Part shown: positions 14,401 to 53,368 of the stretch, one piece after another
Position numbering within the stretch: the first letter of the stretch is position 1
Layout: each line of letters starts with the position of its first letter
NCBI RefSeq assembly: GCF_023055435.1
Contig: NW_025964001.1
Coordinates: 20,956,001-21,020,000, forward strand
Direction: 5' to 3'
DNA: 64,000 nucleotides
Origin: Haliotis rufescens
Taxonomy: Eukaryota
Notes under the pieces: model-generated
What the model saw: only the letters and a program-made list of their open reading frames with translations
What the model was told of the DNA's origin: nothing
The model's database searches: none
Program-made: the position numbers and the translations under genes

Positions 14401-17400
14401 TTCCAAAACACACGTCGGACATTTGCATGGGGGTCGTGTAAATTAGGAAGCGGACGTAAAATATGGCCAACACAAAAGCTCCGAAGCAGTCGCAGTTGAC
14501 GATGAATGAGACAATTAATTCTTTCGAAAATTGGAGGCAGAAATTAGTATACATTCTTTGCCTAGACAATAATTTCGCCCCGCCTCACTTGATCACTTGA
14601 TCACTCAATCACTCATCTGACATGACCTTCTTTTCACACAGAGAGGCATCGTGATGGAGTAAAAATTTGATTTTAATGAGACTGATACCTAATCCAGCAT
14701 ACTGAATGTTCAAAATATTTGCTACCCAGTGTTGTCCACATTACATTGAATGACACAAGTTTATTTACAAGGAGAATTAAGTGTAGAGTAGAGGAAGCCC
14801 CTCTATAAGCATGACCAGGTGAACAAGTTTGTGTATATTATAACCTGTAATCTGCTTGCAGGTGGACACTCTGTACCTGGGAGACAGGACAGCAGTGGAA
14901 CAGTCCCGCAGTGAACTGGCAACATCGCAGGTCAAGTTAGAGAAAATACAGATACAGGTAGAATAATTAGATTTACATCCTTCTATCTAAATGCTTTTGG
15001 ATGTTAGTGTTTGTTTACAACTTGACAGGTAAAATATTCAAAAGTTATGTTATGTCAAAAAGCTGCTTGAATATCGAACTTCCTCCTTTAAAAAAAACTA
15101 TCCTTGTACATGACTGTTAATGTTTGATAGAAATAGAATAAGACCACACTGGAGATTAGAGTGCGTGTGTTTGTCAAAGGTAAAAACATATTCGTCTTAA
15201 ATTTAAAAAAAACAACTTAAGTCAGTCACTTACTTTGGAATTATGTATATTGATTTTAAGACTTTTTTTAAGAAATCAAAATATATGTTAGATTGGTGAT
15301 ATGTTTGAATTATTTCCTTACAAGTATTTTTGTTGCAACTATTGATTCAAGATTCATGAAGAAATTAGATTGACGACATGATCTGTCAGTTTTCGGTGTT
15401 CATGAATCAATTAATATAGTACAAGTACATGTATCAATTTCGTAATGGAATTTTTCTGTGGGGAGTATTAGGGTAAATTGTTTCAATATTATTTCAGCTG
15501 AGGGAGGCAGACAATGAAATAGAAATAAAGTCTATAAAAGTGAAAGAGCTTCAACATTTGCTGGAGACAAATCGTGAAAATGAAGCCAAGTTGACAGCTC
15601 TGGTGCAGTCGCTCCGAGACAGAGTGCGTGAGCTGGAGGACAAGGCAGGGTGTATCGAGACAGTGGCTGGACGTAGCGAGTACGCCATTGGATCACTGCA
15701 GAGAGACAACCGTGAGAGCCATGACCGCATCCTGGAGCTAGAGGGGAGGCTGAGGAAACAGTTGGAGGAGCGCGAGGCGTCCGAGGCCCGAGCTGATGAG
15801 TGCCAGAAGAGGCTGACTGAACTCCAAGCCCAGCTGAGTGGGCTCCTCCGAGCTGATGACCTGTATGAGTCCACCCCCGCATCTGTAGAAACCATTGTCA
15901 GGAAGGTAAGGGTCAAACTTAGATTTTGATAATCTTTAATGACAAAAAGTAATCATATCACATTTAAAATTCCTTTGGCCAAAATTTGAATGCTTATATT
16001 GTTTGTTTTTAAGTGAGACTGATTAATTATGTTGTGGACCTTTTTGTTGTTTTTGCCGTTCGTACATCAACAGAATTACAATCACTTTAAAAAAATAAAT
16101 GTTTATGAACAGAATTGTGTTATTATGCAGTGTTTTCTTTCATATCTTGTAGTTTGTCTTCTTGTATAGTTTATGATCTTTGATGATGTTTGTTTGACAA
16201 TGATTATTAGATTAGTGAGTGGACAGTGTTAATTATTGATGTCTGAAGGTGATGTGGTAAAAGAACTGCCAATTTTCATCTTCCAGATGACAGATCTGAT
16301 GCAGGAAAACGCTATGTTGAAAGGCAAACTTCTGTCCCTGAACGAGGCCTTGAACAACACAGAACTGGAGACCAAGGCCAGTCGGGAAACCATAATGAGG
16401 CTGGTGTCAGAGGTCGGGCGTGAGCAGAAGGTGGCCACGAGATACACAAGTGAAATTGACTCTCTCCGAATGGTAAGACAGGACACATGTAGAATTTGGA
16501 AATGAAATGATTAAATACAGTTTTAGCTTGTTAACCTTAGTTCCATCTGTTTTAGCTTGTTCACCTTAGTTCCAACTAAATGGTGGAGGCCGATACGTTT
16601 TCTGAAGCTGAGGTTGTGTAGCCACCTTGCTGGGCTCTGAAATACTCTTCACCTCTGAAACACATTTTCGTGCACTCTGAGATTAAATCTTCGCTTCCAT
16701 TTGCCTCAATCCATGTTGATTTCTGAGCAAATACAGATGCTGTTGTACACAACATTACAAAATGGTGGCTGGTTGTCATTCTACTGAGATGATGGATATA
16801 TTTCTTTGAGTTCACAATTCACACGACCTCATCCCCACAAATTATTTTCTCATCGAAATTACATGATTCACGAGTAGTGTCCAATTAAAAAAATGAAACT
16901 TAGATGGAGAAGGGGTGAATTTTGACAAGACTGATGGGCCATCTACGTAACGTTTCAGCAAGCCGTTTGTAATTTTAATGGGCCAGGAGTTTAACTGACC
17001 CTTGTAACATTTCCTACTCTTTATCCCAGGAAAGAGACAACGCATTGGCAGCCAGACGAGAGGTGGAGAGGGAGATTGAATTAATGAAGGAGAGGCTAGA
17101 TGCCAACCAGAGGTCGCTGGATGCCACTAGGGGTGAACTGGAGCTGAGACAGGGACGTCTGTCGTCTCTGGACCGGGAGGTTCGTGAGACTTCGCACAAT
17201 GTCCGCAGTTGGGAGAACCAGTACCATCTGTTCCGGGAGCAGATCGCGGGTCTCCTGAGCAACGCCTTTACCATGGTGGAGCCCAGTGAAGACATGATCA
17301 AGGACACGATCAGGAGGATGGCACAGACCAACAAGGAGTATGAAATCGTGAGTAAAGCAGGGATGATTATTCTTCATTTAAGTCTTTTTAATCAAGAGTT

Positions 17401-20400
17401 GAATTTGAATTTCTGAAAATTGAATGGACCTCCCTCCATCTGCAATAGAGACAGAGGCACCTGATAGGCCTACTTTATAATAATAGATATTATCATTATA
17501 AAACAGACATTCTATGATTACATAGAGCATCTCTCCCGATTGTCTTTTGATATCAAATATATCTACTCTCGTCAATAAAAGTTTAAAACTCTGATGCTTA
17601 TCATGTTGATATATTTCCTTTTTTTTTATCATCATACATCATTCTTCCAACTTTTCAGTGTGTAAACAGTGAGTGAGTGAGAATGGTTTTAAGCCGCGTT
17701 TAGCAATATTCCAGCAATATCACGGCGGGGGACACAAGAAATGGGCTTCACACATTGTACCCATGTTGGGAATCAAACCTAGGTCTTCGGCGTGACGAGC
17801 GAACGCTTTAACCACTAGGCTACCCGACCACCCCAGTTTGTAAACAGTCATAAGCAGTGTCTTGTGTATGAAAAGTACTGGTAACCAGCTTTTGTAGCAG
17901 AGAGATTAGTGATGTCATTTAACAGTGACGTCATGGTAAGCAATGACGCCACGATGGTCTGCAAAGCATTGAGAGATGTCCCCCAGGAGAGATTGCAGCA
18001 TCTCACCCATACAATCCCTACTGTGGAGCCCCGTTTTGGGTTATAGATGTTAATTTTCCCTTTGCAGCAATTGGGGAGCCTGGAATCCCGAGTGAAAGAC
18101 CTAACGGAGCAGCTAGAAAATCAGTATGATCTTAATCGGTCAAGCAACCAGAGGTACAAGCAAAATGAGACCAGCTTGTATGATCTGGAACAAAGACTGA
18201 GATGTACGGAAGGCGAGCTTGCAGCAGGGGATCTACTTCGTGATGGGCTCAAGTCAGAGAAAGAGAAGGTGAAAAAATATAAAAGGATGGTACCCATTTG
18301 AATGTTTAATGGATTAACTGGACTGAATGAATGATATAATGTTACTTTCATAGCTGAACACAAATCATTGTCCCTTAATGAATGTCAAAGGCCAAGGATG
18401 CATGGCATTCATTTTGCTCTCGTCTTACCTCATCAAACTGTTAGGGATTGATTTTGAGTGTGAAATAATTTTGAAAATAAAGAAATATAAACTTTAAAAT
18501 ATTTTTATTAAGAAATAAAGTGTCAACCTTATGAACTAATATATCATCTCCATGTCTTATAGTACAGCTTTTTAACATGTACATGCTCTCAATTTTCAGT
18601 ACATGCGTCTGCTGCAACGGTTGGGCGAGAAGATGAAGATGGACCACATTGCCCTTGACCTTGGCTTTGACATGACAATAGACGCCATCATGGCGCGAGC
18701 CGGGCAACTGGTGAAGCTTGAAGCTGATGCTCTGGCAGACCGCAGCACCCACATATACAACCTGCAGCGCAAGGTGAAGAGTCTCAAGGAGCAGCTGGAG
18801 AGCAAGGACCTCCATATTGACCTGCTCAGGAAGAAGATGACAGGTCTGGAGGAACGAGTGCATAGCCGCGGTGACGTGGAGAAGGAGCGTGACGGGGAGT
18901 CGATGCGGGTGCGGAAGCTGGAGAGGCTGGTGGACAAATACAAGCTGCAGCTGACAGACGCCAGACAGGAAGTCCAGAACCTAAAGGCTCATCTGCTCGG
19001 CTCCAGTGAAATGAAGGTGAGACCAAGTGACCAGAGGCACTACTTAAGCATTTGGAACTCATTTCTTTATTCATGCTTAATGAGATGGACTTAATGGCCC
19101 TTTGAACAGTACTTGTGTTAAGTAAGGCTTCGTCTTTATGTTGGAGCTACACCCAATATCAGGCAGGTCCTAGGTGTTTACCACCTTCTCAAGTCCAATG
19201 TGCACCGGCGTGTGCTGACAACCCAGGGATCATAACTGAAGTTAATCTGAGATCATGGGATCCAGCATTTCATGTTTAGAACTCACTTGACATAATTATA
19301 CTTTCCTTTAACAAATATTTTAAAATAAATGTTAATAAAGTTCTTTTGAGCACAGTTATCAATCACGAAATGAAGTTTAGATTCTGTGTGCACTTGTGTA
19401 CAAGTGTAAGCAGTGCATAGTGTTCCACTAGAGCCAGTCTGCAATTATGATCTTATCCCATCTTTTGATAAATGACAGTTTCAGTCCAAGTATATATGGC
19501 TGAATGTATGTGACATCCAATACCATCTTACTGAGGCAAGGGGAGTAATTGACTATAAGAGTCCAGTTTCTATCCCTGCCAAAGTAGGCTGCAATTTCTT
19601 ACTTGATCGTAGCGCCACGAGTGACTATTACAAGTTATGGCCCTTCTATGTCCCTTTTACTAATAAGGCCTAAGGTGAAGAAATAAAATTGGTTCTCATG
19701 CAGTAGCTTTTTTGCAGGCAGCCTTTTTTGTTGTTGTTTGGTTGCGTACAGACTAGTAAGAATCCAAATTCGTATATCGCTGTGTATAAAGCGAGTTTTT
19801 CATAACTTAAAGAAGGCCTTCAAGAGGGGGGCAAGGGGAATCGTATGTGAAGTGATCGGAAGATCGCACAACTCACCGTTATTTACAGCAACCACGGTCA
19901 TATCGTTATTGACACCTTGAAACGAACTCCAGTGGAAAGAGAATGGATATATATATCATAAGTGCCATACACTGAATCGCTGAAAGTCATATTTGCTGTA
20001 GTTCAACAATGAGATGTCAACATAAAGTTTTCGCAATCGCGGCCGCGGGAGCATCGGAGTTGATTGGTCAAATTCTTTCATACGAAAACATATCCGGCAT
20101 TAGCAATCAGCTGAACCAAAGTGCAACGCTTATGTTTATTAATTTATTTCACATGTACCATATTCGACGTAATAAGCACCCGGGGCACTCTAAACAATCT
20201 CAAAAAGGGGGCTCTTATTAGAATATAATTTTGGTGAGGGAAAAAACAGACTGTGCTGGTCGTAAAAGGCGGCTTAATGGATTGGGTGGTCAGACTCAGC
20301 AACTTGGTTGATGGGGTGTCATTGTACACCGACAGCCTGGATAATTAGCTCACAATATCAATCACTGGATTGCCTGGCCCATACTTCTTTATTTACAGCC

Positions 20401-26978: not shown

Positions 26979-29900
26979 TCATCTTGAACATCTGAAATAA
27001 AATATGAAATATCGTAAAATAATATTGTCAAAGTTTAATTTAATTTCTATATTAAATGATACGTATTTCAAAATGTTTCAGCATTCCTTCTGTACAATCA
27101 TTTTCTTGAAATATTGTCATATCAAGAATGACATGTTAGGGAGCTACAATTTGATAACTCTAACTACTTGCATTACATGTGACTGAAAGAGTGAGAGAAG
27201 GTTGTTTATGGCTGCAGGATTATACCAGCTATACTATGGCGGCCTCCAGACTGGCAAACCAGTGGATGATAGCATGAGCAACACGTCATGGGGAATGTTG
27301 ATACAACTGACCTATTAGTGTGTAGAGTGGTTGACCTGATCCATGGCATCACAAAACCGACAGGTCTGGGACTGGAGGATGTTCCACTGGTGCTAGGCCT
27401 AGAGGAATAACTCTTGGACTCTGAAAAAATAACGGCACATGTCTAAAACAAACATGTCAGCTTTCATGATAACGAGATAACATTTTAAACAACACATTTA
27501 AATGTTACAATGGACAAATCCAAAATCCAATTACAGTAAATTCGACCTTACTAAAAATACATGAACAGGAAAACCAAAAACTCCTACCGAACAAATGAAG
27601 AGCTTTCTATGACCCTCGATTCATTACAAATGTGGATGACTTTGGATTGAAACAAAATCCCGGCAACTTCTTCACTGAATGTGAAAGTAAATGCAATTCA
27701 ACAAGGCGGAGAGGGCTGTGGGGACCTATTCTAACACAGGCCCTCCAGGGTTCAAACACCAATGAAGCCCTGTGTCCTATAAAATGAGTGAGTGTGTAGG
27801 GTTTTGTGTTGCAATTAGCACAATTCCGGCCACATCACAAAAAAACATTAACCCCATCGCCCATGCCTTTTTTTAATCCACCATATCTGTTGTACTCTAG
27901 AACGAGATGTAGCATGTGGACTTCCATATGTAAATGTAAAGATCGGAAACTCAAACACTGACAGAACTTTTTTTCCTTTTTTTGTGCGAAATATAGGAAA
28001 CTGATGTTTGACTACTGACCATCTAGTTGCCCGAGTCTCCTCCTCCTGACGCCATTGATTGTAAGGCGGTTGTGGTGTCTGGCGAGAGGCCTCGCCTCTG
28101 TGTCGGGGCTGCCTAGAGCAGCTGTTCCCCCTGGTGCTAGGGACATGGGGCAGTGTCTCTTGGCTGATGTAGGCAGAGCTGGTGGCTGGTGGACCCTCCT
28201 GGTCGGTATCACAATCTGCACCGGTCTCTTCCGTGAGATGGGGGACAGCGTGGTGGATGACCTTCCAGAGAGAGGTTGGCGAGAAGAGACCTGACCGGAA
28301 GTCCCCGGTTTTTGGGTAGATGTGTTTTTGGATGGCGTTGTCTGGACGGAAGTCCAACTCGCTTTTGTTTTCTGAGAGATTTGAGAGGGAACCTGTACTT
28401 TAGATCTAGCAGATGTGTTTCCGTGGCTATTCTTGCATTTGTTGCTTGTTCTTAAATTATCTGCCTTCTTAAACTGTCAAAACAATAAAAAATGAAGACA
28501 ATCACGAAACACGTTTCATACATAAAGATAAACATCTATACTACTAACTTCTTTAAGTGGCATTTGGAAGTTGGTGTGATGAACATGGGAGATAGTTCTA
28601 TAGATATACAACTTCTTTATTACAATGAATGCGACGTTTCGGTATAGAAGCTTTGCGGCGCGTCTGTCAACTGGGCTAAAAAGGGGGGCAAATTTGTTAT
28701 TATAAGTAATTTTGAAAAAACATATGAATAAGCTGTCGGAAGTTGATGGGTGTGTCGGGCATTGACATACATGTAATAAAAAGAAAGAATATTAATCACC
28801 GAACTTGACTTGTGCAAGTCATTCATCAAGATAAATCCTTGTTTGCCATTTACAAGTGGTATACCTAAACAGTTTGTCTTTATCAACTTTAAATATGTAA
28901 ATAACCTTATTCTCCTTTGATTTCTTTGCACAGCATACCGCCAGACTGTCTCTGTCATTACTGCGTCGCTTCAGTACCCGTGATTTGGTGGTCTTCGAGG
29001 CAGTCTTCTTTTGCTGCCCGAGGCAAGTGCAGCCAGATGCTGTTGACACTTTTGTGATTTTTGATCCGTTAATCTTCCTCCGGTGAGATCTCACAGGACG
29101 AAAGGACGACGTGTCACTCTGTGCAGAGTAAGGGCCGTCTGTAGAGGGTGACTCCGTCTTATCCCAGGATGAATGGGTTTCTGCGTCTGTCGACAGTTAT
29201 ATTTAGATTCATTGATAACTTTATGTGCAGTTAAAAATTTATGTTCTTAAACTACTGCGTCTTGCAACAAACCAGCTTTGTTCGTACTTTTATTTCTGTT
29301 TCAGAAATATCTTTTTGAATATCAGTAGATGCCTGATGTCTTTGTGCGATGAATAGAAGATAGATGGTTTAACATGTTTAGATCATCGAGTTACGCGGCC
29401 AGTAGTGACAATGTCAACCTTTTCAGGTTATGGTCTTTCATCACTTTCATCACTAAATGAAATAATTAACAGGTATTTTGTAAATATTGGCGTGCACTGA
29501 TTGACGACTTTTTTTGTTTCAACTATCATTGTTTATCTGTACCATATATATTAACACTTGTTATTTAAACAATCAAGCATTATTGACTAAATTAGCACTT
29601 GTTACCCACACTACTTTTATATGAACTTTTCAACACGAAAAAAAAGAAAATAACTATGTAATGTTATTTACCTTTACTTTCTACCAACATTACTTCTGCA
29701 ATGTAGGTAGAAAGTGAAAAAAAAACACAATAAAAAGTTCATTTGTTTTTCGTGTAGGAAAGTTCATATAAAGTTTTCTTTTTAGCTACATTACTTCTGC
29801 AAGACCCATGAAAATCGGGGTGAGAATAGGTCTTAAGTAACCCATGCTTGTCGTGAAAGGCGACTAACGGGATCGGGTGGTCAGGCTCGCTGATTTGGTT

Positions 29901-32900
29901 GATTCATGTCATTGTATCCCAATTGCGTGGATCGATGCTCAGATATCAATCACTGGATTGTCTGATCCAGACTCGATTATTTACAGACCGCCGTCATACA
30001 GCTGGAATATTGCTGAGTGCGGCGTTAAACAACAAACAAACAAAACAAAAACCTCTGCAAACCACACGTGTACAATGCGTGAAGCCCACTTCTGCAAACA
30101 TTTAATGGGAACTTCAACATAAAAGTAAGGGACATTATCAACCACTCGCCCAAAGCCTTCTGCCTAAATGTTTTAGGTATCTTTCGGCCAGTGAACATAT
30201 CTCATTTCTAAAAGCTTGCAAATATGCTATAAATATTTGGTGTTTGAAAAACGTCCCCAGTTGCACTGGAAGACTGACTCGGGTGTTCACCTCTTTCACT
30301 GTTGGCAATCTCCCTCTCTAGCCACAAGATTGCTGCGTCCACTGGGTCTGCCGGCTCCCAATGTGAGGCGCCAGTGCTCGAACTATGCTCTGAAAATAGG
30401 TATAGTTGGCGACACTGATACTTTAAATAACGGCATGCTCATGTCAAATCATAATCTATACACCCAGGACTTCCATATCAGTAAACCTACACTAACACAA
30501 ATGCGAGTTCGGGAGTAGACTAATATCTAGTCTCTGAAATGAACATATCTTACAGAAAAAAAGTTATTAAAATATCTTAATAAAATATAATAAAAAGGAG
30601 CCAAGAGACTCTCTTCATTGATACTGCAGTAATATAGACTTGCCAAACATTATAGACTTGCTAGGGCTATATTATAGACTGTAAGACAGAATGGAGCATG
30701 ATGTCAAATATTCCCCACAAAACGCAGTTGATTGTGCATTTCAGTATGAATATGTGACATGAACCAGAAACCCCGTGAATCATATTTGCAATGAAAGCTT
30801 TCTGATGATCTATGTCTATACATTCAGGCGAAAAGGGGAGATGTCTCCTTACCATAGATGTTTGGTGTTAATGGATGAGCGTATGTGTGATCGTTCGTGG
30901 CATATCTGGTATGCGTCTCTGAAAAAGAAAGAGTTCTCCTTAAAATAAGAAGTATCACAAAATGCCACGTTGCATAGTAAGAGTTCCGTTACTGTGAGAG
31001 GTAAGCAGGCCGTATGTGTTTTCGACTTTGGATAACCCGCTATAACACAAATATGGTGCAGACAAACCAAGGATGACATTATGGCAAACGTTAGAATCGA
31101 ACCCACGATCAGAGGACCTTGTACGAAAACGGACCCGACTCTGCAGCGTCTCAGATCACTTGTTCACCCGAATCCCCAAGAAATATATCAAGAGAGTCAC
31201 ACAGATCAAGACAATGTGTGATGTCTTCTACATACCAGCATAAAGAATATCGTTCCCACTGTTTAAGAATGATTAATAAACTTGAAAATAATATTTACCC
31301 CGGACTATACTTGCTATGTGGTTCTCCAGCCATGTAATCGCAGTGTCCACAGGGTTGAGAGCATCAACAGATGCTGAGGAAGCGGCATCACTCTGGGCGA
31401 GGGACCTGGCAGGTGTCTGGGAACTGGAGGTGTGTCTGCTGGACGTACACGATTCTATCTGCTCAGAAGCTTCAAGCAGAAGATTTATTCCAGACGTGGG
31501 TTTGTCAAAGACCGGCGTTGACTCGGACTCTATAACTTCTGCAGCTTGTAGAAGAAGGTCCACTCCGGATAGTGGGTCGGACTGTGGCTCGTTCACAGTC
31601 CCCGAAGGATTAAGGAGACCAATACCTGACACTGGCCAACTGGGAGATGGGTATAGGAATGGTCGATTCCTGTCGGCAGGTGGCGTGTCTATCAATAAAT
31701 AAAATCACTCTTCGTGAATGTAAACATAGAATGCATGACCATGTGTGCTTATAAGCATAGGGCTAAATATTTGTTTGATTTGTCACTTTTTGCTATAACA
31801 AAGGTCGAAACAAATATTTCAACATTGAAATATTAACATCCGCGTAGCAAATAAGCGTTCTGCACTGTGGCACCCGGAATACCAGGGAACGGCATCCGGC
31901 CTACCAGAAGGTGGTTCGCACCCTCTCGAAATGGTGATTCAATGGTACCAGAGCCAGGCGCATTGTCCTCTTTAAAACCATTAAAAAAAAAGAAGATATG
32001 ATTACAATATTGCAAGTCAAGGATACTTTTTCTGCTGTCTATAGATCGGTAAGCGATACCCAATCCGTTAATCTTTTCTTAATTTGTTGAACAAGTAGGA
32101 CGCCACTGCTTTTATCACATGTGTTGAACACTGATGTACACGTTGATGTACGAATTCACTGAAATCGCTATCATGTTCTTTATGTTCATTTGTATAATAG
32201 GTAACAATACTAGTCTTGTACCTCAACCTTAACCCGAAGTAACATGATGTTCGTGAAAAATAATCATCTTCACACCGATTCGGTACCCGTAAACCAATAC
32301 AAAAGGAAATTTACGCCCGCTATACGCTGTGATATGCAGTTCCAGCCACACGTTTTCGATTTGCCTGGATAGGGGAGGTTACTCTAATCATTAATCAAAA
32401 TCAAGGGAAAACTACTCTCATATCAAACTCCAGTAACATTCTCTAAGTACGTACGCTAATCCTTCGTGAGATGAATGTGACACGTTAGGAAACGTACTTT
32501 GAATATGAATTAGACTAATTATTCTCCACGCTTGCCTGCAAGACCTGCGCTTTCTTGTTCTGTTGTCCCACTGTCAAATGTTCGTAATTAAACACAATTC
32601 CCTAAAGACTAAAGCGCGCTATCGGGAAAGTAATTCCTATGGATGTATGTGACGTCATAAACAACAATCGAAGGGCGTCACATTATTGCTAACCTTTTCC
32701 ACTGTGATGGGGAAAATAATCGACAGCTATTGTAGGCAGAAGGTTTATCGAGAAAGAAAAAATATGTTAATATTTACAAACCGAAACGACTTGTAACTTC
32801 CATATAGTTGCCAAAACAATACAAGCGCATTTCATCGACACCATTAATGAATGTACAAAATATATTTAAAATACAGATACATTTGCAAACACGATATTTC

Positions 32901-32962
32901 TATTCTTGTTTTGTATTTCTGGAAATGCTAAAGTTCTTACCTGAACTTTCCACAGAATACAT
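26979..32962 (-). CDS. Orphan multi-exon gene, about 500-aa S/T/P/K-rich disordered protein with two SID-like helices and an HCF-1-binding motif
   Basis: Exons 32941-32962, 31883-31969, 31299-31688, 30853-30918, 30291-30389, 28906(or 28939)-29186, 28020-28473, 27312-27420 and 26979-26991. Each is flanked by polypyrimidine-AG and GT, phases match (1,1,1,1,1,0,1,2) and the frame is open for about 506 codons. AATAAA on the minus strand at about 26835-26840. The exon-2 donor and the last exon are least certain. Confidence 0.65.
29803..30053 (+). mobile_element. SINE-like family C in orphan-gene intron
   Basis: Full length, single-hairpin variant, TSD tctgcaa. Confidence 0.88.
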
Positions 32963-33125
32963 TCTATATTTTATAGCCTTTCTTTTTTATTCTTCAAGTA
33001 AGCAGCGGCTTGTTACGTCCGCACTCGCAGGATGCAAGAGTTAGTCTGTGACGTCACAGATAACAATTGAATGACGTCACATCCAATCTTTGCAATGCTT
33101 ACTGTAAACATGGACAAATAAAGAG
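32640..33125 (-). promoter_or_regulatory. CRE-rich promoter of the orphan gene
   Basis: Perfect TGACGTCA at 33049-33056 (inside the 16-bp palindrome TCTGTGACGTCACAGA), at 33072-33079 and in intron 1 at 32650-32657. CCAAT at about 33083 and FOX-type TGTAAACA at 33103-33110. Confidence 0.55.
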
Positions 33126-33834: not shown

Positions 33835-34078
33835 TATCACGCCCAACTAGAGGCAACATGGACAGTTACGGGTTTACCGAAATATGGGCTTACATCAATC
33901 AGATATCTTCGCTACAAAACGGTTTAGGAAACATAACACGAACGCCGCATACAACAAAAATTATAAAATTCAAAACGAAATGGCCCCTCAATTTCTAAAA
34001 GAACTTATTCCACACAACGTTGGTGCAAAAATTCATTATAATTTGAAAAATTCTGAAAACATATCAATTCCTCGTTGT
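33835..34078 (+). mobile_element. Degenerate non-LTR (LINE) ORF2 C-terminal fragment
   Basis: QLEATWTVTGLP...YKIQNEMAPQFLKELIP..HYNLKNSENISIPR, typical of LINE RT C-terminal regions; frameshifted. Confidence 0.6.
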
Positions 34079-34580
34079 TTATATACACAAGACGGCATTC
34101 ACTATGGTGTTTTTGAACGGAATCGCCTCCCTTTCGGCCTCAAAAATGCTCCTCAGGCATTTCAACAAGCCATTTCAGGCACTAAAAGAAACGAACTGGC
34201 CTTATATATTAATATAATATTTTCTAAAACGTTTTCATAACATTTGCATCACCTCAAGGCGGTCAAAGAAGCAGGACTCACGCTTAAACCAAGCAAATGT
34301 AAATTCGTAACAAAACAAGCAAACTACTGAGGGCATATCTTCAGCCAAGATGGCATCCATGTCAATCCTTCAACAATAGATTCAGTCACACAGATCCCAC
34401 CCTTAAAAATGTCCTTGACATGCGCCATTTCTTAGGTTTTGCCTCGTATTATAGCAAATTTTTAGCAATCTTTTCTGGCATCGCCTCTCCTCTTCACAAC
34501 TTTCGGAAAAACGACGCGTCTTTCGAATGATCCAGCAATCGAATAGCTAGAGCAGGCCCTTACAACAGCCCTGTATTGAT
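34079..34580 (+). mobile_element. Degenerate Ty3/Gypsy reverse transcriptase fragment
   Basis: NRLPFGLKNAPQAFQ, AGLTLKPSKCKF, GHIFSQDGI and RHFLGFASYYSKF..FSGIASPLH motifs, with stops and frameshifts and no intact YxDD. Confidence 0.85.
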
Positions 34581-34700
34581 GAGGATGGCCATATTGCTGT
34601 CGAGTCTTTTTATTGAGGCGGAGTTTTATATCTTTTCATGCAGATGGAGGCTGAGTTTATTTTATTTACACAACATTATGAGCTGTGTGTGTGTTTTGGT

Positions 34701-34853
34701 NNNNNNNNNNNNNNNNNNNNNNNNNNNNNNNNNNNNNNNNNNNNNNNNNNNNNNNNNNNNNNNNNNNNNNNNNNNNNNNNNNNNNNNNNNNNNNNNNNNN
34801 NNNNNNNNNNNNNNNNNNNNNNNNNNNNNNNNNNNNNNNNNNNNNNNNNNNNN
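34701..34853. other. Assembly gap (N run)
   Basis: Run of n. Confidence 1.
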
Positions 34854-35548
34854 TCTGGATTATGAAGATACCGGTCGCATGCGTGTCGCGTGGAGAGACC
34901 CTCACACTGAATACACTTACTGTATTAATTTTCCTGCACTCAACAGTCACACTTTTTAAATGACCCAAAGGACCATACGAGCTTCATGGAATAACGTCTG
35001 ACTTTCGTACACATTACGCAATTTCAGAGACATACCTCGGGTTTGATTAACTCATTCCCATCCAAGGTTTAGTCACGTTGTCGTGGTGATGGCGGTTTTG
35101 TTCATTTGTCCTTAGTTGTCCTTAATAATAGAACTGATGAACAGTTGTAGTTATTTTATCCGGCTCAAACATGTGTTGAGGTTGTATTTTAGACTTTTTT
35201 TGATGATGATGATCATGTCTGATTCATCTTCTTCTTTCGTTTCGCCTAGTTCCGTACTATATATGAATAAAAAAATCGGCACTGTATGTGTTTTGGAAAA
35301 CAAGATGGCGGCCACCACGAAATCACTGCCGGTTTTTGTTTTCGATCTGGGATCCTTATTCAAAGTTCACTTTCAATTAAATAAAGTATAACTACGTATT
35401 TGGAGGTGAGTGAATAAGAAAGACGTTATGTGGATTAAATTTTTTTTTTTTTTAGGACTAAGAGTCATTTGGCGCTGTAGAAGTGAGCTGTAATTCCCAC
35501 AGAGCACAGTAACAGAGTTTTCTAACGGGACGATCCGCAGTACCTTGT

Positions 35549-45191: not shown

Positions 45192-46068
45192 TGACGTAAT
45201 ACAGACGCCATTGTAGATGAGATACAGACATCGTGCTGATGTAATACAGACGCCATTGTGAATGAGATACAGACATCGTGCTGACGTAATACAGACGCCA
45301 TTGTGGATGAGATACAGACATCGTGCTGACGTAATACAGACGCCATTGTGGATGAGATACAGACATCGTGCTGACGTAATACAGACGTCATTGTGGATGA
45401 GATACAGACATCGTGCTGACGTAATACAGACGCCATTGTGGATGAGATACAGACATCGTGCTGACGTAATACAGACGCCATTGTGGATGAGATACAGACA
45501 TCGTGCTGACGTAATACAGACGTCATTGTGGATGAGATACAGACATCGTGCTGACGTAATACAGACGTCATTGTGGATGAGACACAGACACCGTACTGAC
45601 GTAATACAGACGCCATTGTGGATGAGATACAGACACCGTACTGACGTAATACAGACGTCATTGTGGATGAGATACAGACATCGTGCTGACGTAATACAGA
45701 CGCCATTGTGGATGAGATACAGACATCGTGCTGACGTAATACAGACGTCATTGTGGATGAGATACAGACATCGTGCTGACGTAATACAGACGTCAATGTG
45801 GATGAGATACAGACACCGTACTGACGTAATACAGACGCCATTGTGGATGAGATACAGACACCGTACTGACGTAATACAGACGTCATTGTGGATGAGATAC
45901 AGACATCGTGCTGACGTAATACAGACGACATTGTGGATGAGATACAGACATCGTGCTGACGTAATACAGACGCCATTGTGGATGAGATACAGACATCGTG
46001 CTGACGTAATACAGACGCCATTGTGAATGAGATATAGACATCGTGCTGACGTAATACAGACGCCATTG
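45192..46068. repeat. 45-bp minisatellite, about 19 copies
   Basis: Unit tgacgtaatacagacgccattgtggatgagatacagacatcgtgc, highly homogeneous. Confidence 0.95.
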
Positions 46069-46429
46069 TTACAGACATCAGGAGCATTGATCTACGCATT
46101 TGGGATACGATGACATGTATCAACCAAGTCAGCGAATTTGACCACCCGATCCCGTCAGTCCCTTACGACAAGCATGGGTTGTAGAAGACCAATTCTAACC
46201 CGGATCTTTAGGGTTCAGGTCATAGTGAAGACATTCACGGACATGCAGTCAAAGACACTGACTTATTTACCAAAACATGGAAACAAAGAAATCTAAGTGT
46301 CCAGGTGATCGTCAACAATGACTGCGTGTACTGACACCGTCTACATCTTGTCTCAGCGATTCGGGCGCCGCAATTCCTTGCCGTTGCGTTCCTTTGGAGG
46401 ACCAGAAAACTATGTCGTAAACTCGAATA

Positions 46430-49812: not shown

Positions 49813-50084
49813 CCCGCCACGGATCAGACTTGAACGACCGAAGAACCAACCTCCACAAGGACGGAAATCCCCAAGCCAGTACCTTGATTCTGTTGGATAT
49901 GTGCTTTCGTCTTATGAAGACCCAGCCGCGTATAAAGGCGAATGTCAATTAGGTTCTGTAACTGTTATATCAATTGATAAACAGGCTAGTAATGTCACCT
50001 AGTACTTGTATATAGCATTGGTCAGAATGAAATAACACTGTGGGGATTCCGGATCCGAATAGGTCCCTAGCAACCTATGGATGT

Positions 50085-51475
50085 CACAGTCTGTGGACGA
50101 ATTGTTCTGTGTGAATGTCTTAGTCTGTGGACCAACCACCTGTGTATGAATGTCTCAGTCTGTGGACCAACCATCTTTGTATGAATGTCTTAGTCTGTGG
50201 ACCAACCACCAGTGTATGAATGTCTCAGTCTGTGGACCAACCACCTGTGTATGAATGTCTCAGTCTGTGGACCAACCATCTTTGTATGAATGTCTTAGTC
50301 TGTGGACCAACCACCTGTGTATGAATGTCTTAGTCTGTGGACCAACCACCTGTGTATGAATGTCTCAGTCTGTGGACCAACCACCTGTGTATGAATGTCT
50401 CAGTCTGTGGACCAACCACCAGTGTATGAATGTCTTAGTCTGTGGACCAACCACCAGTGTATGAATGTCTTAGTCTGTGGACCAACCACCAGTGTGTGAA
50501 TGTCTCAGTCTGTGGACCAACCACCTGTGTATGAATGTCTTAGTCTGTGGACCAACCACCTGTGTATGAATGTCTCAGTCTGTGGACCATCCACCTGTGT
50601 ATGAATGTCTCAGTCTGTGGACCAACCACCTGTGTATGAATGTCTCAGTCTGTGGACCAACCACCTGTGTATGAATGTCTCAGTCTGTGGACCAACCACC
50701 AGTGTATGAATGTCTTAGCCTGTGGACCAACCACCAGTGTATGAATGTCTTAGTCTGTGGACCAACCACCTGTGTGTGAATGTCTCAGTCTGTGGACCAA
50801 CCACCTGTGTATGAATGTCTCAGTCTGTGGACCAACCACCTGTGTATGAATGTCTCAGTCTGTGGACCAACCACCTGTGTATGAATGTCTTAGTCTGTGG
50901 ACCAACCACCTGTGTGTGAATGTCTTAGTCTGTGGACCAACCATCTGTGTATGAATGTCTTTGTCTGTGGACCAACCACCTGTGTATGAATGTCTTAGTC
51001 TGTGGACCAACCATCTGTGTATGAATGTCTTAGTCTGTGGACCAACCACCTGTGTATGAATGTCTTAGTCTTTGGACCAACCACCTGTGTATGAATGTCT
51101 CAGTCTGTGGACCAACCACCTGTGTATGAATGTCTTAGTCTGTGGACCAACCACCTGTGTGTGAATGTCTTAGTCTGTGGACCAACCATCTTTGTATGAA
51201 TGTCTCAGTCTGTGGACCAACCATATTTGTATGAATGTCTCAGTCTGTGGACCAACCATCTTTGTATGAATATCTAAGTCTGTGGACCAACCACCTGTGT
51301 ATGGATGTCTCAGTCTGTGGACGAATTGTTGTGTGTGAATCTCCCTATCTGCTAGCGAATTGTTACGCGTGAATGTCTCTGTCTATGAATGATGAAGATG
51401 TGTGTGAATGTCTCTGTCTCTGAACGAATTGTTACCTGCGAATGTATCTGTCTGTGGACGAATTGCTGTGTGTGA
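50085..51475 (+). repeat. 35-bp minisatellite array, about 35 core copies plus a degenerate edge
   Basis: Unit agtctgtggaccaaccacctgtgtatgaatgtct(c/t). Confidence 0.95.
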
Positions 51476-51914
51476 ACTTTCTCCAGGGTGACATAGCATT
51501 ACCTTGCATTGTTACAATAAAACAAGTGAGTCATCATGTTTTATGTAACTGTCCGTAATCTCAGAAACAACTGATGGTTCCATTAGCATACAGGCAGCTG
51601 GAAAGGCTTGTAGGACTTAACATTTGACATGCTTATGATTGCCCCTAATATACAAGACACCTTTGACATTGTTAAACATGTTAAACATTCATACCTTGTC
51701 ATTTAAATGTAACAAAAACAAATACCCATTTACATGAAGACTTCGTGACATGAATTTGTGAAGCAAACACGAGAATGTCTTGAATGTGAATAACCTGGTC
51801 TGACTTACAGTAGTAAAGCATTATCTCTCTTGACATTATTAGAGATGTGAATTAAATCTTCAAGGGTTTAGTTCGCCCACTAACATTCACATACAGCTGG
51901 TTCGTCCTCGCAAC

Positions 51915-53150
51915 AATTCGTCCATAGATTGAGACATTCAAACACAACAAATCGTCCACGGAGACATTCACATTACAAAATCGTCCACAGACTGAGACAT
52001 ACATACACAACAATCGTCCACAGACTGAGACATTCACACACAACAATCGTCCACAGACTGAGACATACATACACAACAATCGTCCACAGACTGAGACATT
52101 CACACACAACAAATCGTCCACAGAGACATTCACATTACAAAATCGTCCACGGACTGAGACATACATACACAACAATCGTCCACCGAGAGAGATATTCACA
52201 CACAACAATCGTCCACAGACAGACATTCACACACAACAATCGTCCACAGACAGAGACATTAACACACAACAATCGTCCACAGACAGAGACATTCACACAC
52301 AACAATCGTCCACAGACAGAGACATTCACACACAACAATCGTCCACAGACAGAGACATTCACACACAACAATCGTCCACAGACAGAGACATTCATACTGC
52401 AACATTTTTCCACAGACAGAGACATTCACAAACAACAATCGTCCACAGACAGAGACATTCACACACAACAATCGTCCACAGACAGAGACATTCACACACA
52501 ACAATCGTCCACAGACAGAGACATTCATACTGCAACATTTTTCCACAGACAGAGACATTCAAATACAACATTCGTCCACAGACAGACATTCACCTACAAC
52601 AATTCGTCCACAGACAGAGACATTCACACACAACAATTCGTCCACAGACAGAGACATTCACACACAACAATTCGTCCACAGACAGAGACATTAACACACA
52701 ACAATCGTCCACAGACAGAGACATTAACACACAACAATCGTCCACAGACACAGACATTCACACACAACAATTCGTCCACAGACAGAGACATTCACACACA
52801 ACAATCGTCGACAGACAGAGACATTCATACTGCAACATTTTTTCCACAGACAGAGACATTCACAAACAACAATCGTCCACAGACAGAGACATTAACACAC
52901 AACAATCGTCCACAGACAGAGACATTAACACACAACAATCGTCCACAGACAGAGACATTCACACACAACAATCGTCCACAGACACAGACATTCACACACA
53001 ACAATTCGTCCACAGACAGAGACATTCACACACAACAATCGTCCACAGACAGAGACATTCACACACAACAATCGTCCACAGACAGAGACATTCACACACA
53101 ACAATCGTCCACAGACAGAGACATTCACACTGCAAAATTTTCCACAGACC
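51915..53150 (-). repeat. 33-34-bp minisatellite array, inverted relative of the 50085 array
   Basis: Unit acaatcgtccacagacagagacattcacacaca; its reverse complement is tgtgtgtgaatgtctctgtctgtggacgattgt. Confidence 0.95.
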
Positions 53151-53368
53151 GAGGCAGTCGCATTACCTTGTGCCAACATGATTTAAAACACATTTGCGTA
53201 GATTGGTTGTTTTTAGAGATTCGAGTCTGGCGGTCAAGATATGAAATAATTTTGGCATTGCAATGTATTTTAATAACAATTTGTAAGAAAAACTGTTTTG
53301 TAATTTTGGGAAATACCGTTTCTTTCGTATTATACTCAAAGAGAGTGTGTGTATAGAAATAATATTAT

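What the first reader, a model, noticed from the sequence alone, without database searches (positions are those of the whole stretch)
26979..32962. Hidden 9-exon orphan gene encoding a disordered corepressor-adaptor-like protein (two Sin3-interaction-like helices plus an HCF-1 motif)
Seen: the ORF track shows only fragments, but nine minus-strand exons splice in phase into about 500 open codons. The product is S/T/P-rich with no recognisable folded domain. It contains SGVDLLLQAAEVIES (about 31525-31569), SGINLLLEASEQIES (about 31451-31495), NDHTYA (30881-30892) and K/R-rich NLS-like stretches (RSHRRK, KRRS, RRRR). Established: Mad1/Mxi1 SIDs (NIQMLLEAADYLE) bind Sin3 PAH2, and [DE]HxY is the HCF-1 Kelch-binding motif. 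Inference: a lineage-specific linear-motif scaffold or decoy that bridges or titrates Sin3-HDAC and HCF-1 complexes without its own DNA-binding domain.
Basis: partly seen in the sequence, partly recalled or inferred. Interest (0 to 1): 0.85.

Follow-up and report, generated by a model that had tools for sequence, protein, structure and literature searches.

The report
Annotated abalone-only disordered nuclear-type protein gene
The interval holds a real multi-exon gene, already listed in RefSeq as an uncharacterized red-abalone protein, whose disordered product carries a conserved HCF-1-type docking motif, while its Sin3-type helices are only loosely conserved and its function is untested.

Summary
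The gene is real but not hidden. The exons translate at 100% identity to RefSeq XP_046359203.2 (LOC124137093, Haliotis rufescens, "uncharacterized protein", 477 aa). It has eight coding exons, not nine, all with GT-AG introns, spanning exactly 26979-32962 on the minus strand.

- **Relatives:** the only ones found are H. cracherodii (94% identity) and H. asinina (58-60%).
- **No family placement:** there is no Pfam, PDB or Atlas match, and the gene is single copy in its own genome.
- **Structure:** AlphaFold gives mean pLDDT 38. Only two VDxAIxWLExxIA helices reach moderate confidence.
- **Charge:** the N-terminal half is acidic and the C-terminal half strongly basic.
- **HCF-1 motif:** DHTY lies in an invariant DHTYAHP block in all three species.
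- **Sin3-like helices:** they resemble the Mad1 SID in H. rufescens and H. cracherodii. At the same positions in H. asinina they fail the pattern, and a different repeat fits instead.

My verdict is an abalone-restricted, fast-diverging disordered protein, probably a nuclear linear-motif adaptor. HCF-1 docking is plausible. Sin3 bridging is speculative. The same first-stage scan also noted the repeated WLE helix separately (s1-816602).

The parts
32941..32962 (-). Coding exon 1 (ATG at 32962; 22 nt; MYSVESS plus the first base of codon 8)
   Evidence: the N-terminus has the same form in H. asinina (M.S.E.S); donor gtaaga
31299..31688 (-). Coding exon 2 (390 nt, phase 1 to 1). Holds the NRPFLYPSPSWP block, three SG[IV]x[LI]L repeat units (including the two SID-like helices) and the first VDxAIxWLExxIA helix.
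   Evidence: (100% to P0002; 66% to H. asinina, E 9e-43)
31525..31569 (-). SID-like helix 1, SGVDLLLQAAEVIES (residues 48-62)
   Evidence: AF2 predicts a helix at 49-61 but with pLDDT about 40. 11/15 residues identical in H. asinina, with I to T at the last hydrophobic position.
31450..31494 (-). SID-like helix 2, SGINLLLEASEQIES (residues 73-87)
   Evidence: AF2 does not predict it as helical. H. asinina has SGINLLTEVSEPTES, which contains a proline.
31306..31353 (-). First PVDxAIxWLExxIA helix (residues 120-135)
   Evidence: (helix 120-148, pLDDT 64-76); 14/16 residues identical in H. asinina
30853..30918 (-). Coding exon 3 (66 nt, phase 1 to 1), carrying DHTYAHP
30881..30892 (-). DHTY, which matches the HCF-1-binding motif [DE]HxY (residues 147-150)
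   Evidence: the DHTYAHP block is invariant in the three species
30291..30389 (-). Coding exon 4 (99 nt, phase 1 to 1), with the second PVDxAIxWLExxIA helix (30298-30345)
   Evidence: (helix 175-200, pLDDT 67-78)
28906..29186 (-). Coding exon 5 (281 nt). Start of the basic half. Holds SHRRKINGSKITKV and ASGCTCLGQQKKT (29002-29088) and a bipartite-NLS-like stretch running from KRRS to AKKSK (28915-28971).
   Evidence: (27/27 residues identical to H. asinina across the two blocks)
28020..28473 (-). Coding exon 6 (454 nt). S/T-rich and basic, with SRKRPVQIV, AKRHCP and VRRRRL.
   Evidence: (47% identity to H. asinina, E 2e-28, in this frame and not that of the 169-aa ORF)
27312..27420 (-). Coding exon 7 (109 nt), with PWIR and HTNR
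26979..26991 (-). Coding exon 8 (13 nt, encoding CSR and the stop). This is the least certain exon.
   Evidence: the tails differ among the three species
33044..33082 (.). 39-nt module with two perfect TGACGTCA sites, 82-120 nt upstream of the ATG. Candidate promoter element.
32645..32683 (.). Second copy of the 39-nt module (82% identical), inside intron 1
   Evidence: these are the only two copies in the 1.33-Gb genome

Best explanation
The interval is a real, single-copy protein-coding gene with eight coding exons. It is the RefSeq model LOC124137093 of the red abalone Haliotis rufescens.

Its 477-residue product is almost entirely disordered. Detectable relatives exist only in other abalones.

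**Shown**
- The N-terminal half (residues 1-190) is acidic. It carries three roughly 25-residue repeat units with an invariant SG[IV]x[LI]L core. It also carries two VDxAIxWLExxIA helices on either side of an invariant DHTYAHP.
- The C-terminal half (residues 191-477) is strongly basic and S/T-rich. It holds a conserved bipartite-NLS-like stretch and several K/R clusters.

**Inferred**
- The basic half takes the protein into the nucleus and perhaps onto chromatin or nucleic acid.
- The acidic helical half docks partner proteins through short linear motifs. This would make the protein a transcription-cofactor-like adaptor with no DNA-binding domain of its own.
- The best-supported single contact is DHTY with the Kelch domain of HCF-1.
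- Docking of the LLxAA-type helices on a Sin3 PAH domain is possible but weakly supported.
- Whether the net effect is activation or repression is open.
For: **Gene reality**
- All exons match P0002 at 100%.
- All seven introns are GT-AG with pyrimidine tracts, and no exon has an in-frame stop.
- The reading frame is kept in three species despite 40% amino-acid divergence.
- The gene is single copy, so it is not a transposon.

**Restricted distribution**
- phmmer of exon 2 against 1.84 billion representatives found only the Haliotis cluster.
- Full-length and profile searches found only Haliotis proteins.

**Disorder and helices**
- AF2 gives mean pLDDT 38, with helices at 49-61, 120-148 and 175-200.
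- There is no Pfam or PDB match.

**Charge split**
- Residues 1-190 have K+R 8 against D+E 25.
- Residues 191-477 have K+R 55 against D+E 15.

**Motifs**
- DHTY is kept in all three species inside the invariant DHTYAHP block.
- VD.AI.WLE..IA occurs twice in every species and in 0 of 100,000 shuffles.
- SG[IV].[LI]L occurs three times in every species.
- The stretch from KRRS to AKKSK keeps the same spacing in H. asinina.

**Partner and literature**
- A Sin3-like gene with PAH repeats exists in the same genome.
- HBM and SID-like (AAxxL) motifs are recognised cofactor-docking motifs (10.1101/2022.08.26.505062).
- The Mad1 SID sequence is given in PMC5687616.
Against: - There is no expression evidence.
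- No binding, localisation or structural test was possible.
- [DE]HxY has only four residues and appears in 1.9% of shuffles.
- The SID-like pattern is not kept at orthologous positions in H. asinina.
- The most strongly conserved blocks match no known motif. These are SHRRKINGSKITKV, ASGCTCLGQQKKT, NRPFLYPSPSWP and the WLE helices. The real function may therefore rest on contacts that nobody has described.
- With only three closely related species, conservation has limited power.
Confidence: 0.45

Rival explanations
1. The protein is a scaffold or decoy that binds Sin3 PAH domains through two Mad-type SID helices and binds HCF-1 through DHTY. It thereby bridges or titrates the two complexes.
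For: - VDLLLQAAEVIE and INLLLEASEQIE follow the hydrophobic, Ala-Ala and acidic layout of the Mad1 SID, NIQMLLEAADYLE (PMC5687616).
- That pattern occurs in only 102 of 200,000 shuffles.
- A relaxed form is present in each species.
- DHTY is invariant.
- Sin3 PAH repeats exist in this genome.
Against: - In H. asinina both orthologous helices lose the last hydrophobic residue, and one gains a proline. The strict pattern has zero matches there.
- Their conservation, 11/15 residues, is no higher than the exon average of 67%.
- AF2 gives helix 1 low confidence and predicts no helix for the second.
- The consensus as quoted in PMC10163088 is not met literally.
- HMMER finds no link to any SID chain in the PDB.
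- There are no binding data.
Confidence: 0.12
2. The N-terminal half is an HCF-1-dependent activation module of the LZIP/Luman or VP16 type. It would combine two hydrophobic-x-x-LL boxes, an HBM and acidic Trp/Leu helices, carried on a protein that has no bZIP domain. The protein would then be a co-activator rather than a corepressor adaptor.
For: - The LZIP activation domain is documented as two LxxLL motifs plus the HCF-1-binding motif (Luciano and Wilson 2000, cited in PMC6179040).
- Here VDLLL and INLLL precede DHTY.
- The half is net acidic.
- The two best-predicted helices are acidic, with a conserved Trp and Leu.
Against: - The boxes start with V or I, not L, so strict LxxLL is not met.
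- Which two of the three boxes fit differs between species.
- There is no bZIP or other DNA-binding domain.
- No activity test was possible.
Confidence: 0.18
3. The motif matches are fortuitous. The protein is a fast-evolving, lineage-specific basic disordered protein with some other role, for example a germ-line chromatin, nucleolar or RNA-binding protein. In that case the uninterpreted conserved blocks are the functional ones.
For: - Identity is only 94% to H. cracherodii, and the differences are concentrated in the basic half. There are about 4 differences in residues 1-190 and about 25 in residues 191-477.
- The strongest conservation lies in blocks with no known motif.
- Two perfect CRE sites lie just upstream of the ATG. 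This is compatible with cAMP-regulated or germ-line promoters, which is my own inference.
- The C-terminal tail is variable.
Against: - DHTYAHP is invariant, in its own small symmetric exon.
- The SID-like pattern and the HBM together occur in 1 of 200,000 shuffles.
- There are no tissue expression data either way.
Confidence: 0.2
4. The three repeat cores are SUMO-interaction motifs, IGLL, VD[LI]L and INLL, followed by Ser/Glu-rich tails. The protein would then be a reader of poly-SUMO chains.
For: The [VI]x[VIL][VIL] core is the only part of the three repeats that is invariant in all units and all species, and it is followed by E/S-rich residues.
Against: - The pattern carries very little information. 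At least three matches occur in 6% (H. rufescens) to 25% (H. asinina) of shuffles.
- The invariant SG in front of each core is not part of known SIMs. This rests on my own knowledge.
Confidence: 0.04
5. The gene model is a prediction artefact, meaning a non-coding or untranslated transcript.
For: All three proteins are computational predictions.
Against: - The frame stays open over about 480 codons in three species at 58-94% identity, with in-frame indels only.
- Exon phases are consistent and all splice sites are canonical.
- Conservation follows the model frame in exon 6, not the alternative 169-aa ORF.
Confidence: 0.03

Closest known systems
RefSeq LOC124137093 (XP_046359203.2, H. rufescens), with XP_071080742.1 (H. 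cracherodii) and XP_067682564.1 (H. asinina), all named 'uncharacterized protein'
   Same: This is the same gene. Every window exon is 100% identical to XP_046359203.2. The two orthologues are 94% and 58-60% identical.
   Different: Nothing differs in sequence. These records carry no functional annotation, and their C-terminal tails disagree with one another.
Mad/Mxd/Mnt N-terminal Sin3-interaction domain (Mad1 SID, VRMNIQMLLEAADYLERRER; PMC5687616)
   Same: A short amphipathic helix with hydrophobic-x-x-LL, then x, then AA (AS in the second helix), then x-x-hydrophobic-E, close to the N-terminus.
   Different: - There is no bHLH-Zip domain, so this is not a family member.
- The aromatic position (Mad1 Y18) is Val or Gln here.
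- The motif is present in tandem copies.
- It is not conserved at orthologous positions in H. asinina.
LZIP/Luman (CREB3) N-terminal activation domain: two LxxLL motifs plus an HBM (Luciano and Wilson 2000, via PMC6179040)
   Same: The order of elements is the same: two x-x-LL boxes followed by an HCF-1-binding tetrapeptide, in an acidic N-terminal region. That LZIP's tetrapeptide is also DHTY is from my memory and was not checked here.
   Different: - There is no bZIP domain and no transmembrane segment.
- The boxes begin with V or I rather than L.
- There is no detectable sequence homology.
Small HBM-bearing HCF-1 regulators and THAP-family HBM proteins
   Same: A [DE]HxY tetrapeptide in a disordered stretch next to helices.
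   Different: There is no THAP zinc finger or other Pfam domain, and no homology.

Membership tests
Mad/Mxd/Mnt repressors | bHLH-leucine-zipper domain that dimerises with Max | tested here: not met
   No Pfam family at E up to 10 for P0002, and none relevant for P0001. The C-terminal half is predicted disordered.
Mad/Mxd/Mnt repressors | N-terminal SID helix of the Mad1 type | tested here: inconclusive
   The pattern is matched twice in H. rufescens and H. cracherodii and not at all in H. asinina. A relaxed pattern is matched by a different repeat unit in H. asinina.
Sin3 PAH-binding linear motif (functional class) | Physical binding to a PAH domain | not testable with these tools
   No complex prediction or assay is available. 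The partner gene exists in the genome.
HCF-1-binding-motif proteins (functional class) | [DE]HxY tetrapeptide in an accessible region, conserved in orthologues | tested here: met
   DHTY lies at residues 147-150, and DHTYAHP is invariant in three species. The flanks are predicted disordered or at a helix end.
HCF-1-binding-motif proteins (functional class) | Binding to the HCF-1 Kelch domain | not testable with these tools
   No assay or complex prediction is available.
CREB3/LZIP family | bZIP domain and transmembrane segment | tested here: not met
   No Pfam bZIP hit.
CREB3/LZIP family | Strict LxxLL boxes | tested here: not met
   The boxes are VDLLL, INLLL and IGLLL, with V or I at the first position.
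THAP proteins | N-terminal THAP zinc finger | tested here: not met
   No Pfam hit. The N-terminus is fixed by the conserved start M.S.E.S.
Transposon or repeat-derived ORF | Multiple copies in the genome, or transposase / reverse-transcriptase domains | tested here: not met
   Only the locus itself matches in the 1.33-Gb genome, and there are no Pfam domains.

The most novel reading that the evidence does not exclude
A genus-restricted, fast-diverging protein made only of linear motifs physically couples or titrates the Sin3/HDAC and HCF-1 complexes in abalone. Its Sin3-docking helices would turn over among three tandem repeat units between species, while the HCF-1 motif stays fixed.
Probability: 0.08. 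Interest if true: 0.6.

Novelty: new member of a known kind. Interest (0 to 1): 0.28.

Why it matters
If the motif reading holds, this would be a lineage-specific cofactor assembled from short docking motifs rather than from folded domains. It would also show motif turnover between tandem repeats in closely related species. That would make it a tidy natural case for studying how regulatory adaptors arise and evolve.

As things stand, it is an already predicted, uncharacterized abalone gene. The practical value here is a verified exon map, a motif and conservation map, and a short list of cheap experiments.

Tried and rejected
**Searches that led nowhere**
- Pfam on five ORF pieces and on both full proteins found nothing.
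- The word-indexed homology search on the 140-aa ORF found nothing, because its length window excludes the full protein.
- PDB sequence searches with exon 2, with a 25-residue SID piece and with the three-species profile gave nothing but a chance ribosomal hit at E 4.3.
- The ESM Atlas gave no usable neighbour for the whole protein or for residues 1-200.
- A literature search for the LOC number found no papers.

I therefore had no orthologue DNA and could not compute dN/dS.

**Ideas considered and rejected**
- Transposon ORF: the gene is single copy and multi-exon.
- Mad/Mnt, CREB3 or THAP membership: the defining domains are absent.
- A Cys-based zinc site in ASGCTCLGQQKKT: H. cracherodii lacks two of those residues.
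- A UBA-like reading of the WLE helices: there is no Pfam support, and the upstream helices a UBA domain needs are missing.

- I did not build or search the joined spliced model. I used the identical database protein P0002 by its id instead.
- I did not run a fold search, because a model at pLDDT 38 would give meaningless matches.


Full report
**What is in the sequence**

The window is a eukaryotic stretch, G000:C223:20956001-21020000, from a 1.33-Gb genome. On the minus strand between 32962 and 26979 I located eight segments that are open in consecutive phases and bounded by canonical splice signals:

| Exon | Coordinates |
|---|---|
| 1 | 32962-32941 |
| 2 | 31688-31299 |
| 3 | 30918-30853 |
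| 4 | 30389-30291 |
| 5 | 29186-28906 |
| 6 | 28473-28020 |
| 7 | 27420-27312 |
| 8 | 26991-26979 |

- All seven introns begin with GT and end with AG behind a pyrimidine tract.
- The exons sum to 1434 nt, which is 477 codons plus the stop.
- The count is eight coding exons and 477 codons, not nine exons and about 500 codons.

**Identity of the gene**

- A phmmer search of exon 2 (131 aa) against 1.84 billion representative proteins returned a single hit, P0001, at E 1.4e-40. This is XP_067682564.1, "uncharacterized protein" of Haliotis asinina.
- Searching with P0001 returned P0002, XP_046359203.2, "uncharacterized protein LOC124137093 [Haliotis rufescens]", 477 aa.
- tblastn of P0002 on the window gives 100% identity in every exon, apart from boundary codons. 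The window is therefore red abalone, and the "hidden" gene is an existing RefSeq model.
- Its 90% cluster also holds XP_071080742.1 of H. cracherodii, 479 aa.
- I did not search the joined spliced model. I used P0002 by its id, which is the same sequence.

**Distribution**

- Nothing outside Haliotis was found with exon 2 by exhaustive HMMER, with the full H. asinina protein, or with a two-species profile.
- In the last two searches only the 8000 candidates sharing the most words were scored. That is a caveat for an S/T-rich query.
- The Atlas gave no neighbour.
- Pfam and PDB gave nothing.
- In its own genome the gene is single copy with no paralogue. This excludes a transposon ORF.
- No paper mentions the LOC number.

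**Anatomy of the product**

- S+T+P make up 34% of residues.
- Residues 1-190 are acidic (K+R 8, D+E 25). Residues 191-477 are strongly basic (K+R 55, D+E 15).
- AlphaFold2 on the three-species alignment gives mean pLDDT 38 and pTM 0.17.
- It predicts helices only at three places: 49-61 (pLDDT about 40), 120-148 (64-76) and 175-200 (67-78).
- The N-terminal half is built from internal repeats.
  - Three units of about 25 residues have an invariant SG[IV]x[LI]L core.
  - Two copies of VDxAIxWLExxIA are present. Each closes an exon in phase 1. The pattern is found twice in every species and in none of 100,000 shuffles.
  - The scan's separate note s1-816602 describes this second repeat, and I confirm it.
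- Between the two WLE helices, a 66-nt symmetric exon carries DHTYAHP.

**Conservation**

| Comparison with H. rufescens | Identity |
|---|---|
| H. cracherodii | 94% |
| H. asinina | 58-60% |

Identity to H. asinina by feature:

| Feature | Identical residues |
|---|---|
| Exon 2 | 85/127 |
| Exon 3 | 14/22 |
| Exon 4 | 22/33 |
| Exon 5 | 63/94 |
| Exon 6 | 69/146 |
| Exon 7 | 21/36 |
| SID-like helix 1 | 11/15 |
| SID-like helix 2 | 11/15 |
| WLE helix 1 | 14/16 |
| WLE helix 2 | 14/16 |
| HBM region | 9/11 (DHTYAHP invariant) |
| SHRRKINGSKITKV plus ASGCTCLGQQKKT | 27/27 |

- NRPFLYPSPSWP is also invariant.
- H. cracherodii lacks two residues (CT) inside the Cys block, so a fixed metal site there is unlikely.
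- The stretch from KRRS to AKKSK keeps its spacing and fits a bipartite NLS layout. That fit rests on my own knowledge of the consensus.

**Test of the Sin3 claim**

- The Mad1 SID is VRMNIQMLLEAADYLERRER (PMC5687616).
- VDLLLQAAEVIE and INLLLEASEQIE share its layout: hydrophobic-x-x-LL, then x, A, A or S, then x-x-hydrophobic-E.
- A regular expression for that layout matches twice in H. rufescens and H. cracherodii, and in only 102 of 200,000 shuffles. The resemblance is therefore not trivial.
- In H. asinina the orthologous segments read VDILLQAADLTE and INLLTEVSEPTE.
  - Both lose the last hydrophobic residue, and the second gains a proline.
  - The pattern has no match there.
- A relaxed pattern is met in H. 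asinina only by the first repeat unit, IGLLLRASEIV. That unit is degenerate in H. rufescens.
- This can be read as motif turnover among redundant repeats, or as absence of constraint on the SID-like half. What is invariant is only the SG[IV]x[LI]L core.
- The simplified consensus printed in PMC10163088 is not met literally. It does not fit the published Mad1 peptide either, so I give it little weight.
- The fuller consensus I recall from Brubaker et al. 2000 is from memory.
- A Sin3-like gene with three PAH hits exists in the genome, so the partner is available. Binding could not be tested.

**Test of the HCF-1 claim**

- [DE]HxY occurs once, at residues 147-150, in all three species.
- It arises in 1.9% of shuffles, so presence alone is weak evidence.
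- Its invariance within a seven-residue block, in a protein that is otherwise 58-60% identical, is the best motif-level support available.
- HBM and SID-like AAxxL motifs are recognised cofactor-docking motifs.

**An equally good known analogue**

The LZIP/Luman activation domain is documented as two LxxLL motifs plus the HBM (Luciano and Wilson 2000, cited in PMC6179040). The same order of elements is seen here: x-x-LL, x-x-LL, then DHTY, in an acidic N-terminus. The motif set therefore does not discriminate between a corepressor adaptor and an HCF-1-dependent activation module.

**Regulatory region**

- TGACGTCA occurs 8 times in the window against 1.0 expected.
- Three of these lie at the 5' end of this gene.
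- They belong to a 39-nt two-site module present twice: at 33044-33082, just upstream of the ATG, and at 32645-32683, in intron 1.
- These are the only two copies in the genome.
- This suggests CREB/ATF-type control, which is my inference.

**What could not be done**

- No complex prediction is available.

**Verdict**

The protein is an abalone-restricted, fast-diverging, disordered protein with an acidic helical half and a basic half.

Its most likely role is a nuclear linear-motif adaptor. HCF-1 docking is a reasonable hypothesis. Sin3 docking is weaker, and the bridging or decoy idea is untested. I score interest as modest.

Noticed in passing
window 32645-32683 and 33044-33082: A 39-nt module carrying two CRE(-like) TGACGTCA sites is duplicated at 82% identity. 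One copy lies in intron 1 and the other 82-120 nt upstream of the ATG. These are the only two copies in the 1.33-Gb genome.
   Followed up: partly
window 26979-27352 (3' end of the gene): After HT[NT]R the three species' models have three unrelated C-terminal tails.
- H. rufescens splices to a 13-nt exon (CSR, then stop).
- H. cracherodii reads through (SVVWQRP).
- H. asinina reads on and uses the last exon in another frame.

The true 3' end needs RNA data.
   Followed up: partly
window 27848-28357 (-): Exon 6 contains a second long open frame (169 aa) that overlaps the coding frame. Conservation with H. asinina follows the model frame, not this ORF.
   Followed up: yes
window 29002-29088 (-); P0003: H. 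cracherodii lacks the two residues CT inside the ASGCTCLGQQKKT block, which is identical between H. rufescens and H. asinina.
   Followed up: no
window 45192-46069, 50076-51322, 51911-53153: Three large minisatellites: 45 nt x 19.5 copies, 35 nt x 35.7 copies and 33 nt x 37.7 copies. They produce the long repetitive pseudo-ORFs in the ORF list.
   Followed up: no
window about 29860-30060 (intron 4) and near 46123: A SINE-like element, whose ORF begins MIHVIVSQ, occurs in intron 4 and again in inverted orientation next to the 45-nt minisatellite.
   Followed up: no
window 15540-19094 (+): Several coiled-coil-type exons of a neighbouring plus-strand gene. They gave only sub-threshold Pfam hits (CCDC22_CC, MAD, Filament).
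   Followed up: no
window 33884-34240 (+): A weak reverse-transcriptase fragment (RVT_1, below the cut-off) lies just upstream of the gene's promoter region. An N stretch lies within 34576-34959.
   Followed up: no
G000:C257:3259733-3269841 (-): Three PAH-repeat matches on one strand within 10 kb. This is the genome's Sin3-like gene and the candidate partner for binding tests.
   Followed up: no
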